From Pocillopora damicornis (lineage: Eukaryota): a stretch of DNA of 64,000 bases. The notes under the pieces are model-generated. The model had not been told where the DNA came from. It ran no database searches and saw only the letters and a list, made by a program, of their open reading frames with translations. The stretch covers positions 1 to 64,000 of the forward strand of contig NW_020847002.1 of the NCBI RefSeq assembly GCF_003704095.1. Direction: 5' to 3'. The first letter of the stretch is position 1; every line of letters begins with the position of its first letter. Of this stretch, positions 3,887 through 20,459 are shown in pieces. Both the position numbers and the translations under genes were made by a program.

Positions 3887-4915
3887 ATGAATATTACCAA
3901 CACCTCGTCAACCTCCAATCCAGTTTTCATTCCACCAGAGGTGAAGACAGCTCTTTACTCGAGTATTTTTGTCCTTGGGTTGTTTGGGAACTCTTTCGTT
4001 ATTACAGTTTTGGCCAGAAAAAGGTCTTCTCGCACCTGCCATGACATCTTCATCTGCAATCTTGCAATATCTGATCTAATTCTTCTCCTGACATATTTTC
4101 CTATGTTTTTTGCCCATGCTGTAGGAAACTTTAAAGCACCGAGAGTATTTTGCAAGCTGATATGGCCATTGATCACAATTTCGTATCTCTCCAGCATCTT
4201 AATCATCACATCTATGGCTATTCATCGCTCCAGGATGATTGTTAATCCTTACACTTCCGAAATAAGTCGAAGAAATGTCTACATCTGGATTTTCTGTTTG
4301 TGGATCATGTCGTTTGTTTGTATTCTGCCTGGAATGGTTTTTGCTGAGGTCAATCGAATGGGAATGTGCCACGTAGCTTGGCCTTCAGTGGAAGCTCACG
4401 TAGTATTTCGATTTTTCATGTTAATGGTTCAGTATCTCTTGCCATTGACAATAACAGCAGTCGCCTACATACGCATTGGGCTGGCCATAAATAGATCTAA
4501 ATTTCACCGTAAGTTTTCAAAGCAGCCCAAAGCCCTGAGCCAGACGCGACGGCGAGAAAACGCACAGGTTGTGCGGACCATAGCAACAATTGTGATAATA
4601 TTCGCTATTTGTATGTTTCCGAAACATCTGGCCTCTATCTACTATTACTTCGGAGAAAATGGCAAGGAAAAGGGAAAAATCCTCTTCAGGCTTCTCCATA
4701 TTTCCGAGATTTTCGCTGTTTTTCACAGTTGTTTAAATCCGCTTGTTTACGGCACAGTCATGAAGCATTTTCGCGCTGAGTACTTTAAATACCTTCAAGG
4801 TATCTTCTGTTATTGCTGGAAAACACGTGCAGAAAGAATGTCCAATCCAGGAGATCAAATGACTTCCTTAAATGACCCGCGGTCCTCCAGTAAAATGACT
4901 GCTTCGTCAGAATAG
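3887..4915 (+). CDS. Class A GPCR, peptide-receptor-like (galanin/allatostatin-A-like), intronless CDS
   Basis: 342 aa with 7 hydrophobic segments: TM1 GN, TM2 LAISD, TM3 HRS in place of DRY, TM5 YLLP, TM6 CMFP, TM7 NPLVY. N-terminal N-glycosylation sequons. Confidence 0.93.
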   Translation: MNITNTSSTSNPVFIPPEVKTALYSSIFVLGLFGNSFVITVLARKRSSRTCHDIFICNLAISDLILLLTYFPMFFAHAVGNFKAPRVFCKLIWPLITISYLSSILIITSMAIHRSRMIVNPYTSEISRRNVYIWIFCLWIMSFVCILPGMVFAEVNRMGMCHVAWPSVEAHVVFRFFMLMVQYLLPLTITAVAYIRIGLAINRSKFHRKFSKQPKALSQTRRRENAQVVRTIATIVIIFAICMFPKHLASIYYYFGENGKEKGKILFRLLHISEIFAVFHSCLNPLVYGTVMKHFRAEYFKYLQGIFCYCWKTRAERMSNPGDQMTSLNDPRSSSKMTASSE

Positions 4916-5312: not shown

Positions 5313-6398
5313 CTATATTATTTTCGGGATCAGTGCGGTTGATTGAGTGGGTCCTCGGTAATCCATTTCTAGTAGATCTGTGGTTTGTCCACCTCTTGTC
5401 CATGTATTGAACCTCTCGCTAGCTTGGTGCTGTTGACACGGTTTTGCTTGGAGAATTCTTTTGTAGCGACAAACGAGAGTAGATTTGAGATATTGAACGT
5501 AATCTTGGCGAAACTGGCGAGTTACTGTCCCGTAGATTAAAGGGTTCAAACAACTGTGAAATACAGCTAATAAGTCGGAAAATTTGAAAATAACTTCTGC
5601 TGTCTTCCGGCCACCATTGCCACCAAAATCGACCAGCAACCAGGCTACGTGAGTGGGAAGCATGCACACAGCAAAGGAAACAACTATGGTTGCAAGTACT
5701 TTGGCAATTTTTTTGTTTTCTTGTTTCCTCGCCTCTTCCGCAGGTCTTGGCGGGGAAGTAAAAGACCTACGCCGCTTTGAGAAAAAGAGTTCTCCCCCAA
5801 TCATGACATATGCAACAGCAATGATGATTAGAGGAAGGAAGTATTGGAGCGCGGCGAGCACAGCAGTATAACCTCGCTTGTGCTCTTTTGTAGGCCAATC
5901 TTCAAGACAGCCTCCTGATGGTCCAACTCTAGCCACGATGATAAGTGGCAGGGCAACAAGAAAAGAAAGAACCCAAATAACCAAAAAACACAAAAAGAGC
6001 TGCCTTTTTTCAAGTACTCCCTCGAAAGGGCGAAGGATTGCTTTGCAACGATGAACTGCCATCAAGGTCACGGTAAAAATCCCTGCACAAAAGGATACAG
6101 TCATCATAGGCCAGATAATCTTGCAGTACACTAACGATCCGAGGAAATCAGACACTTGCATGTAGATAAATACTGGTAAACATAAAAGAATAAAACTTAA
6201 ATCAGAAACCGCCAAATGGATGATAAAAATGTCGTTTAAAGTACGAGTGTGCTTCTTGGCGACGACGAGGAGAACCAGAAGATTTCCTGTAGAGCCAAAT
6301 AAGAAAGTCAAAACAAAGATCGTTAGAGTGGCCATTCTTGCTGCTTCGTCGACTGCCGTGCCCCGTTTGTTGTTAAAAATATCCGATGAAATATTCAT
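5313..6398 (-). CDS. Class A GPCR, paralogue of 3887 and 13091
   Basis: 361 aa; GN, LAVSD, CKIIWP, HRC, QYFLP, CMLP, FHSCLNPLIYG. Confidence 0.93.
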   Translation of the reverse strand: MNISSDIFNNKRGTAVDEAARMATLTIFVLTFLFGSTGNLLVLLVVAKKHTRTLNDIFIIHLAVSDLSFILLCLPVFIYMQVSDFLGSLVYCKIIWPMMTVSFCAGIFTVTLMAVHRCKAILRPFEGVLEKRQLFLCFLVIWVLSFLVALPLIIVARVGPSGGCLEDWPTKEHKRGYTAVLAALQYFLPLIIIAVAYVMIGGELFFSKRRRSFTSPPRPAEEARKQENKKIAKVLATIVVSFAVCMLPTHVAWLLVDFGGNGGRKTAEVIFKFSDLLAVFHSCLNPLIYGTVTRQFRQDYVQYLKSTLVCRYKRILQAKPCQQHQASERFNTWTRGGQTTDLLEMDYRGPTQSTALIPKII

Positions 6399-13090: not shown

Positions 13091-14209
13091 ATGTCTGCGA
13101 ATTCAACTCAACTTACACAAAGCCCTACGGAAAGAAATGTGCGCTTGGGTTTTTACATCGCCACTTTTGTTATTGGACTTATCGGAAACCTTCTGGTGCT
13201 AATCGTAATCATTGCCAAGCGAGCAAAGAAAACTGTCAACGATTTGTTCATCATGAATTTAGCTGTGTCGGACCTGATGCTTATCTTCTTTCTCCCGCTG
13301 CATATCTACAATATGTTTGACACTATTCGTGTCACGGTATTTTTCTGCCATTTTATTCGTCCTCTCATGACAGCATCGTTCTTCGTCAGTGTCTACACCC
13401 TCACCTCAATGGCCATCCATCGGTGTCACGTGATCTTACATCCCTTCAAACAGGAAATTCGCCACAGGTCTGCTGTTTTATGGATAATAGTGCTGTGGAT
13501 CATGTCATTTGCAAATGTTCTTCCATTGATGATTGTCACCACACCTTACCCACCATTCGAATGTCTTGAAAAATGGCCGAGTCTGAGTCACAGGCGAGCA
13601 TATACAGCTGCACTCTTTGTTCTTCAGTACATCCTTCCACTGGTGATCATCGCAATAGCATATATCAGAATAGGTTTAGATCTGAACCGCTCATGTTCTC
13701 GTAGTTTCCGGAATGCCAGGGCTGCCAAAAGCCCGGAGAACCAGGCAAGACGGCGAGAAAACTTTAAAGTAACTAAAACTCTGGCAATAATCGTAATGAT
13801 ATTTGCTGTGTGTATGCTACCCAGTCAAGTGGGATGGATGTTGTTGGATTTTGGTGACAAAGAACAAAAAGCGATTGCCATCAAGGTGGTTTTTAAATTT
13901 TCCCTTGTTCTTACAGTGTTTCACAGTTGCCTGAATCCTCTTGTTTATGGAAGCATCACTAAACAGTTTCGTCGTGGCTACATCAGATATCTGTCGTATT
14001 TCTGTTGCTGCTTTAGAGGTTCCATCCTAAGAGAGTTTAAGATCATTTCAGAAAGCTCGTCACAAAATCGCCGTGACGACTTCAAACACACGCACAATGG
14101 ACTTAAAAGAAATGGCGAACTCGAAACGATATGTTCTTTAAAATCAAGAGAAATTCAAGATGAATCATCTTCAAGCAACGAGATATTTGACGTTGTGACC
14201 GTAATATAG
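13091..14209 (+). CDS. Class A GPCR, paralogue of 3887 and 5313
   Basis: 372 aa; GN, LAVSD, HRC, QYILP, CMLP, FHSCLNPLVYG, C-terminal CCC palmitoylation-type motif. Likely 5' UTR intron acceptor TCTTTGCAG near 12944. Confidence 0.94.
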   Translation: MSANSTQLTQSPTERNVRLGFYIATFVIGLIGNLLVLIVIIAKRAKKTVNDLFIMNLAVSDLMLIFFLPLHIYNMFDTIRVTVFFCHFIRPLMTASFFVSVYTLTSMAIHRCHVILHPFKQEIRHRSAVLWIIVLWIMSFANVLPLMIVTTPYPPFECLEKWPSLSHRRAYTAALFVLQYILPLVIIAIAYIRIGLDLNRSCSRSFRNARAAKSPENQARRRENFKVTKTLAIIVMIFAVCMLPSQVGWMLLDFGDKEQKAIAIKVVFKFSLVLTVFHSCLNPLVYGSITKQFRRGYIRYLSYFCCCFRGSILREFKIISESSSQNRRDDFKHTHNGLKRNGELETICSLKSREIQDESSSSNEIFDVVTVI

Positions 14210-17800: not shown

Positions 17801-19042
17801 TTTTTCAAGATGAGTATAAACCCCTCCTCCTTGAAAATCTCCAGATATACTCCCTCTCAAATATGAAAAACTTTTTAACAAGAAAATATTTGATTAAATC
17901 TGCCTCATAAAAATGCCATTTGGTCAAACAACATCACTTTTATCAACTAAGACCAGTGACAAATACATTCATTGACACCTGCACCAATAGAACTGCATTT
18001 GAAAATTTCAATGAACTGGCTACCGAGAGAACTTTAGAATATTAATTATGAAAGGTACTTTTTCCCACTGTGAAATATATTTCAAGTGAGCAACCAGCAA
18101 TTTCTGGGCTAGATTTCCAACAAAACTGGCCTTCTCAAATTTTTTTTCCAAAGGAAATCCCCTCTGCAATGGGTGAAGGGCATGAACATTTTCTGGAACT
18201 AGACATAATTGCCAAAAGAACCCAAATGATTTAGGGCTGTAATTACAGAAAGATCTTCTTTACACTGAGCAATTTTCAAGCAAGTAAATGGCAGTAAAAA
18301 TAGAGATAATGCAAATTATAGAAAGAGGCTTCACTGAAAATGTTTATTTAGGTAGCAGATAAAGATGATTTAGAAGGCTTCCAAACAAACTTTGTACACT
18401 TTTGAAAAAAACAATGGTACTAGTTTAGCAAACAAACTGTCACGACAAGTTTTTCTTCAAAAAATTCAATGATCTCACGGAAAGTATCATACACTTCCAT
18501 CGATATTATTGTGGAAGAATATCTTTGTTCAGTCAGTAAATGGCTAGGAAAGTAATTGCAAGTAAATTTATTGACAAGTTTTGAACTTGTGGGCATTTGC
18601 TCATTTGTTTGCTGCATTGACGCGTGTAAATCTGGCCTTTTTTAACCATAACACTAAAATAAAATGAGACACCTTTATTAGACCCAAGGAGAATTTAGTA
18701 CGGTTTTTCTTNNNNNNNNNNNNNNNNNNNNNNNNNNNNNNNNNNNNNNNNNNNNNNNNNNNNNNNNNNNNNNNNNNNNNNNNNNNNNNNNNNNNNNNNN
18801 NNNNNNNNNNNGCCATGAAGAGCATTCAAAAACGATTCAAAAGCATCAGGACCACTTCGAGAAAGCTCATCCAAGAGGCAAAATGCCTTCCCCTCACTTG
18901 TAGTTTGAGCAAGAATGGATTCTTTGCTTGCTTCGTCCAAAATTTCTTTGGTAAACAGTACTTCTGTTATTCTCCTTGCATCAATATTTCGCGAGATGTG
19001 AAGCCGAAACTTTCTTAAGACTTTCCTGTGTGATTCCTCCAT
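14870..19042 (-). CDS. CARD (death-fold) - NB-ARC/STAND NTPase - TPR protein, APAF-1/NLR-like architecture
   Basis: Exons: 19042-~18812 (CARD-like MEESHRKVLRKFR...LLDELSRSGPDAFESFLNAL, runs into a gap), 17677-16016, 15855-15649, 15099-14870. The last three are joined in phase by GT-AG introns. Motifs: LP..FVGR, Walker A APPGFGKT, Walker B LILDNAED, LITSR, GIPL, LHPLVQ, then TPRs of the LGQHPFTASLLHYLG / LGDNHLDTARAYYGLG type. The CARD-to-NTPase junction is unresolved. Confidence 0.85.
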
Positions 19043-19096
19043 GTTCTAACATATCAGGAAAAGTTATTTCTGAGTAAAGCAAACGTTTTCGGCCAG

Positions 19097-19340
19097 TTTA
19101 TAGGACGACCTCTCAGTTACTGGCTTTACGGAACAAGGTCCTTCAAGCTTTCCGGGAAATTCCGGAAATTATAGAAGAACGCCTGCGTGGTGAGGCCACC
19201 GGAAACTGAACCCAGCTCAGCCCACCATGAACAATAGTAATGGAAAGTCCCGCCTGCCCTTTTGTACGATACAAACCAATCATTACAAAATAAACATTTT
19301 CCACGGGGAAACTGGCCCAGTTCTCTTCGAAATGTAAACA
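19097..19340 (-). promoter_or_regulatory. Proximal promoter of the CARD-STAND-TPR gene with TATA, STAT, NF-kB, ETS and IRF-like motifs
   Basis: TATAAA on minus at 19102-19097; TTCCGGGAA 19150-19158; GGGAAATTCC 19154-19163; CCGGAAACTGAAC 19199-19211; GGGACTTTCC on minus at 19251-19242; CCAAT 19276-19280; GTAAACA 19334-19340. Confidence 0.7.
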
Positions 19341-20459
19341 TAGCTGTGTGTTTTACATTTAACTGCCTTTTCAAGGTTTTTCGCTGTCTTTGGAGTGTTT
19401 TGATGATACTTTATTCTCTATGAGCCGCAAGCCGAAAGCCGCAACCCGATTCGTTACCGTATAATTTCCTTTGAAGATTAACCATTTATAATTTGCGAAT
19501 GGAAACAACTGTCGGCTTAGGGTGGTAGTTTTTAGGAGCACTAAGTGTGCTAAGCCAGCTGTGTATTGTGTACTTCCTTATTTAAAAGTCCCTCATTAGT
19601 GATTGTAAATGTATTGGATTTCCGCTGAGCTTTACTCTTTCCTGTCACATAGGGACTTACTCCCGGGGCACTTGTTAAAAACAAAAATAAACATCAAAAG
19701 TGGAAAACGTTTTTTTTTACAGCCAAAATTTCAACAGTAAAAAAGACACATCAAAAATAGTACTCAGGCTACACCACTGTCTCTCCTAAGTCTATAACAT
19801 TACTAGGCCTGACAAATATGAAGGGTTCGTCCATATTACCTTAAAAGTCCTTAAAAACCACAGTGTAAAGATAACTGCAATGGTAAATGTTAAACATTAT
19901 CCTCGTTTGAGTGCGGGCCGTGTTTGCTCTCCCGTTATCGATAAGGCCGACTATGAATTGACCTAAGCTCATGTAGCGTGACGGTCAGCAGATGTTTTAC
20001 AAGTCAATAGACTTCTAATGTACTCCAAAGATCAGAACCACGGCAAGACAGGAAACGTAACCGTTTACGCGCATGTGGCAAATTCTGCAGAAGATAATGG
20101 CCGGGTCGAAGCTTGTAAAATTAGTGTTTTATTTTTCAGCATTCCCTACATCCAATATAGACACTTCTAGCGTGAAATAAGGCGCTCTTAAAATTTTAAA
20201 ACCTAAAGCCACATCGAATACAATTAAAACATAAGTGACTAATAACTTAACGCTTGGGATGGTTATTGTTAAGACAGCCAATCAGAGGACAAGTAGCGAA
20301 TTCCCCATGACGACTGCTTTAGTTTACGACTTGCGGTTTGTCTTAAGAGCTGACTTATGTCGATTTCTCGTGGATGTCGATACAAAAGACTTTCCTGCAT
20401 TACAGTAACGGCGAACAGATTTCATCTAGCCACCTTTAAAGTGCATTTTGTCGCTAAAA

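What the first reader, a model, noticed from the sequence alone, without database searches (positions are those of the whole stretch)
19097..19340. Compact NF-kB/STAT/ETS/IRF-like promoter on the CARD-STAND-TPR gene
Seen: within ~150 bp upstream of a correctly oriented TATA box lie an exact GGGACTTTCC, an exact GGGAAATTCC overlapping a perfect GAS element TTCCGGGAA, two CCGGAA ETS cores and a GAAACTGAAC IRF-like half-site pair. Known: these 10-mers are the Ig-kappa and IFN-beta PRDII kB sites, and cnidarians encode NF-kB, STAT and IRF. Inference: the receptor is transcriptionally primed by immune signalling, like NLRP3 priming. The overlapping STAT and kB sites may be competitive or cooperative.
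Basis: partly seen in the sequence, partly recalled or inferred. Interest (0 to 1): 0.78.

Follow-up and report, generated by a model that had tools for sequence, protein, structure and literature searches.

The report
Conserved kB-ETS-STAT coral receptor promoter
The DNA just upstream of a stony-coral CARD/NB-ARC/TPR death-fold receptor gene holds an NF-kB-type site kept letter for letter across at least six coral lineages, next to conserved ETS and STAT-type sites, so it is a credible, testable immune-type promoter, though binding and induction are unproven.

Summary

I compared 17 orthologous promoters: Pocillopora, Stylophora, Oculina and unnamed coral contigs.
- **Distal kB site:** GGGACTTTCC (19242-19251) is present in 15, on the same strand, 175-237 bp upstream of the ATG (one variant, GGGAGTTTCC). 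Its flanks are unconserved. It is the only 10-mer of the 400-bp promoter shared with at least 3 of 4 distant orthologs. It is absent from one rearranged copy and one pseudogene.
- **STAT-type site:** a TTCN3GAA palindrome is kept in 13 of 15, with a free spacer.
- **ETS cores:** two are conserved.
- **Second kB site:** GGGAAATTCC is Pocillopora-only, created by changes in the spacer of that palindrome. The "overlapping kB/STAT switch" is therefore a recent lineage feature.
- **IRF-like pair:** not conserved, and no ISRE is present.
- **TATA and start site:** TATAAA is conserved in only some lineages, and one RNA contig starts 14 nt upstream of it, so the start site is unresolved.

The genome encodes one Rel-homology gene, a STAT and four IRF loci. 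Binding and induction are untested. The same motif combination was already reported as enriched in induced immune genes of a sea anemone. Verdict: a real, constrained promoter and a new member of a known kind.

The parts
19242..19251 (-). Distal kB (Rel-homology) site GGGACTTTCC, 209 bp upstream of the ATG. It is the best-conserved element of the promoter.
   Evidence: Exact match. Same strand and similar distance (-175 to -237) in 15 of 17 orthologous promoters: 14 identical, 1 GGGAGTTTCC. It is the only Pdam 10-mer shared with at least 3 of 4 distant orthologs, matched in 0 of 1000 shuffles. The column profile is ****9*****.
19199..19206 (-). ETS-core block GTTTCCGG (CCGGAAAC on the other strand), 42-46 bp downstream of the kB site.
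   Evidence: GTTTCC is invariant in the 11-promoter alignment. GTTTCCGG is at the same relative place in Pdam, Stylophora, L015, L016 and L018. The second half, GAAC, is not conserved, and there is no GAAANNGAAA in any promoter.
19180..19188 (-). Conserved ACGCAG(G/A)CG(CA) block. The factor is unknown.
   Evidence: ACGC and CG are invariant in the alignment. ACGCAGACGCA appears as a tandem ACGCA repeat in L018, L019, L025, L027 and L028.
19160..19167 (-). Palindromic ETS core TTCCGGAA. In the other lineages it is ACTTCCGCGA, a CGGAAG ETS core.
   Evidence: A CCGGAA or CGGAAG core sits directly upstream of the GAS in 14 of 15 promoters.
19150..19158 (-). GAS-type palindrome TTCCCGGAA (TTCN3GAA), 116 bp upstream of the ATG.
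   Evidence: TTCN3GAA is present at -87 to -126 in 13 of 15 kB-bearing promoters and in the distant homolog L020. The spacer varies (CCG, CGA, CGG, TCG, GCG) while the TTC and GAA halves are kept.
19154..19163 (+). Proximal kB match GGGAAATTCC, a lineage-specific gain in Pocillopora.
   Evidence: Exact match. Stylophora has CGGAAATTCC, and no other ortholog matches GGGRNWYYCC here.
19097..19102 (-). TATAAA, 55-60 nt upstream of the ATG.
   Evidence: TATAAA is at -60 in Pdam and Stylophora, -53 in L015 and Oculina, and -64 in L030. It is absent in L016, L018 and most metagenome copies. It lies inside the RNA contig L022.
19069..19073 (-). Initiator-like TCAGA. Its A at 19071 lies 31 nt after the first T of the TATA box.
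   Evidence: (G)TCAG(T/A) is at -23 to -33 in most orthologs. TCAG scores 9**9 in the alignment. The role as start site is inferred.
19043..19116 (-). Minimum 5' UTR: sequence present in a spliced RNA-seq contig upstream of the ATG.
   Evidence: L022 (Logan SRR15101721, encodes the 791-aa protein) maps at 98.6-100% to 19116-18812, 17680-16016, 15855-15647 and 15105-14337.
18812..19042 (-). Exon 1 coding part: the CARD domain. It runs on into the N gap at 18713-18811.
   Evidence: Pfam CARD, E = 4.8e-10.
19297..19319 (-). Upstream conserved block GGCCAGTTTCCCCGTGGAAAA (GGCC...TTTCCC...GG). The factor is unknown.
   Evidence: It aligns in all six first orthologs. TT, CC and GG columns are conserved.

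Best explanation
Window 19097-19320 (minus strand) is the working proximal promoter of the single-copy CARD/NB-ARC/TPR gene. It has an ordered set of short elements: kB site, then about 43 bp, an ETS core, an ACGCA block, a second ETS core, a GAS palindrome, then a TATA/initiator region.

The most likely mechanism is as follows. The coral's single Rel-homology factor (NF-kB, p50/p100-like) binds the distal GGGACTTTCC(C). ETS factors and probably the STAT bind the sites nearer the gene. Transcription of the receptor would then follow NF-kB activity, and perhaps STAT activity, in the cell.

What is shown: the motifs exist, their order and spacing are conserved, and both kB half-sites are constrained. 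What is inferred: which proteins bind, and whether the result is stimulus-induced 'priming'.

In Pocillopora, two substitutions in the free spacer of the GAS created a second kB match that overlaps it. This is a young addition, not part of the ancestral design.
For: - The motifs are verified.
- The promoter is single-copy, and the kB-N-GTTTCCGG composite is unique in 234 Mb.
- The kB 10-mer is kept in 15 of 17 orthologous promoters, representing at least six groups whose CARD exons are only 62-85% identical at the DNA level. The flanks are unconserved, and 13 of the 15 read the 11-mer GGGA(C/G)TTTCCC.
- k-mer test: it is the only shared 10-mer, matched in 0 of 1000 shuffles. Blocks from -800 to -2400 share almost nothing.
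- The GAS half-sites are kept while the spacer varies, as expected for a dimer site. A single ETS core would not explain this, because the GGAA core is not on a constant side.
- Natural controls: the pseudogene copy L034 and the rearranged L033 lack the kB and GAS sites.
- Trans factors are encoded: one RHD locus, a collinear STAT_bind/linker/SH2 gene, and four IRF loci.
- Literature: cnidarian NF-kB proteins have kB-site specificity close to the vertebrate proteins, and bind a kB site upstream of the Nematostella IkB gene (PMC13042239, PMC2751831).
- Literature: poly(I:C)-induced Nematostella genes are enriched for TATA boxes and for STAT, IRF, NF-kB and ETS motifs (PMC8476169). A CARD/NB-ARC Apaf-1-like gene is induced by poly(I:C) (PMC11251625).
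Against: - There is no binding, chromatin or expression evidence for this gene in any coral.
- The start site is unresolved. An RNA contig begins at 19116, upstream of the TATAAA. The TATA box is missing in several lineages.
- GAS is lost in 2 of 15 promoters (L027, L030).
- The more distant homolog L020 has an ETS-like GGAAGTCC in place of the kB site, so the kB site is not universal in the family.
- STAT or IRF knock-down had no measurable effect on cGAMP-induced genes in Nematostella (PMC8713801).
- All three motif classes share a GGAA/TTCC core, so assigning factors from sequence alone is uncertain.
Confidence: 0.6

Rival explanations
1. The kB site is functional, but it sets cell-type-specific, constitutive expression in cells with nuclear NF-kB (for example cnidocyte-lineage or gastrodermal cells). 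It would not then provide stimulus-induced priming.
For: Conservation says only that the site matters, not when it acts. NF-kB has developmental roles in Nematostella, where it is required for cnidocyte development (cited in PMC13042239). The gene is present in ordinary RNA-seq assemblies: L022 is a full-length contig, and cluster P0001 holds spliced 791-aa members from several runs.
Against: The TATA + kB + GAS + ETS combination is the signature reported for induced immune genes in Nematostella (PMC8476169). A related CARD/NB-ARC gene is inducible (PMC11251625).
Confidence: 0.2
2. The conserved blocks are generic GGAA-core (ETS-type) promoter elements of a TATA-poor promoter. The kB and GAS matches would then be by-products, read by ETS or another factor rather than by NF-kB or STAT.
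For: Every motif contains TTCC/GGAA. ACTTCCG-type ETS sites close to start sites are common promoter elements (general knowledge). An RNA contig starts upstream of the TATA. L020 has a perfect ETS core, CGGAAGT, where the others have the kB site.
Against: Both kB half-sites, GGGAC and TTTCC(C), are invariant, and an ETS factor would constrain only one. The base before GGAA on the reverse strand (T or G) is poor for ETS binding. In the GAS, TTC and GAA are kept while the GGAA core changes side.
Confidence: 0.13
3. The motif cluster is a chance coincidence without regulatory function.
For: Short degenerate motifs are frequent. The two 10-mers occur 272 and 511 times in the genome, no more than composition predicts for the first.
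Against: The conservation test is independent of that choice. It gives 15 of 17 orthologous promoters with fixed order and spacing, against saturated flanks, and loss in a pseudogene.
Confidence: 0.03

Closest known systems
NF-kB-dependent transcriptional priming of mammalian NLRP3 (kB sites in the NLRP3 promoter)
   Same: A STAND-type death-fold receptor gene with a canonical kB site in its proximal promoter, in an animal that has the TLR/NF-kB pathway.
   Different: The protein is a CARD/NB-ARC/TPR (Apaf-1/plant-R-type NTPase), not a PYD/NACHT/LRR. No induction or binding data exist. The comparison rests on my knowledge of the NLRP3 literature and was not tested here.
Promoters of poly(I:C)-induced genes in Nematostella vectensis (PMC8476169)
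   Same: The same combination is reported as enriched: TATA box plus STAT, IRF, NF-kB and ETS motifs.
   Different: That result is a genome-wide statistical enrichment using vertebrate matrices in a sea anemone. Here it is one locus with a multi-lineage footprint in stony corals. The IRF part is not supported here.
kB site upstream of the Nematostella IkB gene, bound by Nv-NF-kB in EMSA (PMC2751831)
   Same: A cnidarian promoter-proximal kB site with GGG...CCC ends, suited to a p50-like dimer.
   Different: The sequence differs (GGGGAATCCCC there). That site has in-vitro binding evidence and this one has none. This one has much broader evolutionary evidence.
Ig-kappa / HIV-LTR kB element GGGACTTTCC
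   Same: Identical 10-mer.
   Different: Identity of letters only. It is an independent occurrence in a coral promoter. In vertebrates the element is also bound by NFAT dimers (my knowledge), but only one RHD locus was found in this genome.

Membership tests
kB (Rel-homology factor) response element | Match to GGGRNWYYCC | tested here: met
   GGGACTTTCC at 19242-19251 and GGGAAATTCC at 19154-19163.
kB (Rel-homology factor) response element | Both half-sites under evolutionary constraint in orthologous promoters | tested here: met
   Distal site: 15 of 17 promoters, invariant apart from one C-to-G at the central N, with unconserved flanks. Proximal site: not met, Pocillopora only.
kB (Rel-homology factor) response element | A Rel-homology DNA-binding protein encoded by the organism | tested here: met
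   One RHD_DNA_bind locus over Pfam's cut-off, in two exons, at G000:C998:730183-731681.
kB (Rel-homology factor) response element | Bound by NF-kB and required for NF-kB-dependent transcription | not testable with these tools
   Needs EMSA/PBM, CUT&RUN and reporter mutagenesis.
GAS (STAT) element | TTCN3GAA palindrome with conserved half-sites and free spacer | tested here: met
   Present in 13 of 15 kB-bearing promoters and in L020. Spacers are CCG, CGA, CGG, TCG and GCG. Lost in L027 and L030.
GAS (STAT) element | A STAT encoded by the organism | tested here: met
   Collinear minus-strand exons at G000:C1014 hit STAT_bind 1-18, STAT_bind 85-123, STAT_linker and SH2, in N-to-C order. Only SH2 passes Pfam's cut-off on its own. 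Three whole-genome Pfam scans at default thresholds were blank.
ETS-binding site | CCGGAA / CGGAAG core, conserved in position | tested here: met
   The GTTTCCGG block is at about -160, and an ETS core adjoins the GAS in 14 of 15 promoters. ETS genes in the genome were not searched.
ISRE / IRF element | GAAANNGAAA (tandem GAAA half-sites), conserved | tested here: not met
   No promoter matches GAAANNGAAA. GAAACTGAAC is found only in the window's genome, and only the half that overlaps the ETS core is conserved.
TATA-box core promoter | TATA element about 25-35 nt upstream of the mapped start site | tested here: inconclusive
   TATAAA to CTCA(19071)GA is 31 nt, the canonical spacing, and TCAG is conserved. 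But a spliced RNA contig begins at 19116, upstream of the TATA. TATAAA is also absent in L016, L018 and several metagenome copies.
NLRP3-like transcriptional priming | Transcript rises after immune stimulus in an NF-kB-dependent way | not tested
No paper names the gene.

The most novel reading that the evidence does not exclude
A hard-wired link from NF-kB to a CARD/NB-ARC/TPR receptor has been kept across robust stony corals (Pocilloporidae, Oculina and at least four other lineages). Feed-forward 'priming' of an apoptosome/inflammasome-like sensor by NF-kB would then be an old feature of coral immunity rather than a vertebrate invention. Pocillopora has recently added a second kB site on top of the STAT site, which would make the two factors compete or cooperate there.
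Probability: 0.3. Interest if true: 0.65.

Novelty: new member of a known kind. Interest (0 to 1): 0.5.

Why it matters
Direct NF-kB target sites in cnidarians are almost all predictions from vertebrate matrices. A 2026 review states that chromatin-binding and knock-down studies are still needed (PMC13042239).

This locus offers a compact promoter of about 250 bp with one of the best evolutionary footprints one could ask for: an invariant 10-mer in at least six coral lineages. It would serve well as an EMSA probe, as a CUT&RUN positive control, and as a reporter of NF-kB activity in corals or Aiptasia.

It also links NF-kB to a death-fold STAND receptor whose ligand is unknown. That suggests when and where the receptor is made. 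The Pocillopora/Stylophora difference (GGGAAATTCC against CGGAAATTCC, over the same GAS) is a ready-made natural experiment on overlapping kB/STAT sites.

Tried and rejected
- There is therefore no read-level start site and no expression comparison.
- **Complex-coral orthologs:** P. verrucosa, Acropora and Montipora proteins gave 'no gene on record', so no named complex-coral promoter was obtained. L020 (50% identity) is probably one, but it is unnamed. L017 and L021 had no recognisable CARD exon within reach.
- **Paralogs:** the nearest paralog in this genome is only 32% identical, so paralog promoters could not serve as a footprint.
- **Gene names in papers:** a search for the Stylophora and P. 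verrucosa gene names found nothing. A search for coral single-cell motif papers gave only unrelated hits.
- **Bacterial-type scan:** the promoter/terminator scan is irrelevant here and found nothing.
- **Ideas rejected for the distal site:**
  - NFAT5/TonE fits only the Pocillopora flank.
  - Su(H)/RBP-J: the flank is not conserved.
  - EBF: the half-site order is wrong.
  - A coding or uORF explanation fails because the conserved blocks are 6-11 nt long and separated by indels of variable length.
- **Intron site:** the third kB match at 18153-18162 in intron 1 is absent from Stylophora.
- **N gap:** when I displayed the first 420 nt of the RNA contig L022 to see its 5' end, the part beyond position 305 corresponds to the window's N gap (18713-18811). 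I did not use it to fill the gap, and I report none of its letters.

Full report
**Where and what**

The window belongs to a 234.35-Mb, 4,393-contig stony-coral assembly. The size and scaffold number match my recollection of the Pocillopora damicornis assembly. The nearest named protein is P. verrucosa LOC131778323 at 99%.

The finding lies just upstream of a minus-strand gene.
- Exon 1 encodes a CARD: ATG at 19042, coding to 18812, then the N gap at 18713-18811.
- A 1.6-kb exon encodes an NB-ARC/NACHT-type NTPase.
- Two further exons encode TPRs (Pfam).

A spliced RNA-seq contig from another Pocillopora sample (L022, encoding 791 aa) maps to 19116-18812, 17680-16016, 15855-15647 and 15105-14337. 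The gene has no close paralog (best 32%). The 350 bp around the finding are single-copy in the genome.

**Observation**

All the motifs are present as described. Positions relative to the ATG, on the gene strand, are:

| Element | Position | Window coordinates |
|---|---|---|
| GGGACTTTCC | -209 | 19251-19242 |
| GTTTCCGG | -164 | 19206-19199 |
| TTCCGGAA | -125 | 19167-19160 |
| GGAATTTCCC (reverse of GGGAAATTCC) | -121 | 19163-19154 |
| TTCCCGGAA | -116 | 19158-19150 |
| TATAAA | -60 | 19102-19097 |

The chance expectation per 64 kb is 0.06, 0.09 and 0.34 for the two kB 10-mers and the GAS 9-mer. All three kB-consensus matches of the window lie within 1.1 kb. This is the only place in the window where the kB, GAS and ETS patterns fall within 250 bp, and 4 of the window's 11 CCGGAA cores are here.

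In the whole genome the 10-mers occur 272 and 511 times, against reversed-pattern controls of 352 and 344. About 0.1 pairs within 100 bp are therefore expected genome-wide. The composite GGGACTTTCC-N(25-55)-GTTTCCGG occurs once.

**The decisive test: orthologous promoters**

From the NB-ARC exon I found orthologs and fetched their genomic DNA.
- Stylophora pistillata: L014, 86% identity.
- Oculina patagonica: L019.
- Three unnamed ENA coral assemblies: L015, L016 and L018, at 63-70%.
- A more distant homolog: L020, 50%.
- Eleven further loci from a scan of metagenome contigs with the aligned CARD exons: L024-L034.

The CARD exons fall into at least six groups that are only 62-85% identical in DNA between groups. 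Unconstrained sequence between them should therefore be scrambled. Indeed, 400-bp blocks from -800 to -2400 share essentially no 8-mers.

Against that background the proximal 300 bp shows short islands in a fixed order.

*Distal kB site.* The 10-mer is on the gene strand at -175 to -237 in 15 of 17 promoters. Fourteen read GGGACTTTCC and one reads GGGAGTTTCC, a change at the free central position. The flanks come in 13 distinct versions with no 5' conservation, and a C follows in 13 of the 15, giving GGGA(C/G)TTTCCC with symmetric GGG...CCC ends. It is the only 10-mer of the window's 400-bp promoter that recurs in at least 3 of 4 distant orthologs. None of 1000 shuffles gave any.

The two promoters without it are informative. 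L034 has stop codons in its CARD and an unrelated upstream sequence, so it is a pseudogene copy. L033 has a rearranged upstream region and also lacks the GAS.

*ETS and ACGCA blocks.* The ETS block GTTTCCGG lies 42-46 bp downstream of the kB site, and GTTTCC is invariant. It is followed by an ACGCAG(A/G)CGCA block whose factor is unknown.

*GAS palindrome.* A second ETS core (ACTTCCGCGA in most lineages, TTTCCGGAA in Pocilloporidae) directly abuts a TTCN3GAA palindrome. The palindrome is present in 13 of the 15, and in L020. The TTC and GAA halves are kept while the spacer reads CCG, CGA, CGG, TCG or GCG. That pattern is what a dimeric STAT-type site predicts. A single ETS core predicts something else, because the GGAA core is not on a constant side.

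*What is not conserved.*
- The PRDII-like GGGAAATTCC exists only in the window's genome. Stylophora reads CGGAAATTCC, and the others have no kB match there. In Pocillopora it arose from changes in the free spacer of the GAS.
- The 'IRF-like pair' GAAACTGAAC is likewise unique to the window. Only the half that overlaps the ETS core is conserved, and no promoter has GAAANNGAAA.
- The intron-1 kB match at 18153 is absent from Stylophora.
- L020 carries GGAAGTCC, a good ETS core, where the others carry the kB site. The kB site is thus a feature of this ortholog group in robust corals, not of the wider family.

**Core promoter**

TATAAA is at -60 in Pocillopora and Stylophora, -53 in L015 and Oculina, and -64 in L030. 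It is missing elsewhere.

An initiator-like (G)TCAG(T/A) at -23 to -33 is widely conserved. In the window its A (19071) lies 31 nt after the first T of the TATA box, which is the canonical spacing.

However, the RNA contig L022 starts at 19116, which is 14 nt upstream of the TATAAA. At least some transcripts therefore begin at or above -74. An assembled contig cannot fix a start site. The start is unresolved, but all the kB, ETS and GAS elements still lie upstream of the transcribed sequence seen.

**Trans factors**

The genome has the following.
- One Rel-homology locus.
- Four IRF loci.
- A STAT gene, recognisable as collinear small exons hitting STAT_bind, STAT_linker and SH2 at G000:C1014. 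Default-threshold scans missed it.

With a single RHD gene detected, NF-kB is the obvious candidate for the distal site.

**Literature**

- Cnidarian NF-kB proteins have binding specificities close to the vertebrate ones. Predicted kB sites are enriched near heat-induced Aiptasia genes. Chromatin-level target mapping is still called for (PMC13042239).
- Nv-NF-kB binds a kB site upstream of the Nv-IkB gene in EMSA (PMC2751831).
- Poly(I:C)-induced Nematostella genes are enriched for TATA boxes and for STAT, IRF, NF-kB and ETS motifs (PMC8476169).
- A CARD/NB-ARC Apaf-1-like gene is induced by poly(I:C) (PMC11251625).
- NF-kB knock-down blunts part of the cGAMP response, whereas STAT or IRF knock-down had no measurable effect (PMC8713801).

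The general idea is therefore known. What is new is a single, sharply footprinted locus on a death-fold STAND receptor.

**Verdict**

| Point | Verdict |
|---|---|
| Observation | Confirmed |
| Interpretation | Partly supported |
| Distal kB site | Strongly supported as a constrained element |
| ETS cores | Supported |
| STAT-type site | Supported with two losses |
| Proximal kB site and its overlap with the GAS | Pocillopora novelty |
| IRF-like pair | Not supported |
| TATA and start site | Open |

Probabilities:
- A working promoter in which NF-kB drives or tunes this receptor: 0.6.
- NF-kB-dependent but constitutive, cell-type-specific expression: 0.2.
- Generic ETS-type promoter elements with incidental kB/GAS resemblance: 0.13.
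- Chance: 0.03.

It is a new member of a known kind. Interest is moderate (0.5), mainly as a ready-made, evolutionarily validated test site for coral NF-kB.

Noticed in passing
window 19620-19650 (minus strand), about -580 to -605 from the ATG: A second conserved module, TGACAGGAAA followed about 13 nt later by CGGAAATCC. It is shared with L015, Oculina L019 and L016 at -700 to -765. It may be a distal enhancer or an alternative promoter, again GGAA-cored (ETS/NFAT/kB-half-like).
   Followed up: partly
window 19297-19319 (minus strand): An upstream conserved block, GGCC(A/T)(G/C)TTTCCC..GG(G/A)A, present in all first six orthologs. It is loosely palindromic (TCCC..GGGA, EBF-like). No factor is assigned.
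   Followed up: partly
window 19180-19188 (minus strand): An ACGCAG(A/G)CGCA block, a tandem ACGCA repeat in several lineages, conserved between the two ETS cores. I could not match it to a known factor. It resembles NRF1 and C/EBP-ATF half-sites only weakly.
   Followed up: no
window 18153-18162 (minus strand, intron 1): A third kB-consensus match, GGGGATTTCC. It is not present in the Stylophora intron.
   Followed up: yes
L034 (Ga0126343_10049679) and L033 (Ga0126339_10008324): L034 is a pseudogenised CARD-exon copy with in-frame stops. It keeps only the last 35 nt or so before the ATG. L033 has an intact CARD but a rearranged upstream region without the kB or GAS sites. Both are natural loss cases.
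   Followed up: partly
window 3887-4915 (+), 5313-6398 (-), 13091-14209 (+): Three intronless ORFs of about 340-370 aa that look like rhodopsin-type GPCRs flank the receptor gene. In Stylophora the neighbour in the matching position carries a 7tm_1 Pfam hit (L014). Oculina has an upstream 373-aa neighbour with no domain call (L019).
   Followed up: no
G000:C1014:61600-65600 (minus) and G000:C998:730183-731681 (+): The genome's STAT gene is split into many small exons and is missed by default-threshold domain scans. Its single detected Rel-homology (NF-kB) gene is at the second location.
   Followed up: partly
L017 and L020 (both ENA sample ERZ26168041): The same assembly holds a 66%-identical ortholog on a 2.8x-coverage contig and a 50%-identical homolog on a 90x contig. 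This suggests that two coral genomes are mixed in that sample.
   Followed up: no
window 32001-34000: G+C is 0.178 in the composition table, far below the 0.32-0.42 of all other 2-kb bins. This may be an artefact of an N run, but I did not look.
   Followed up: no
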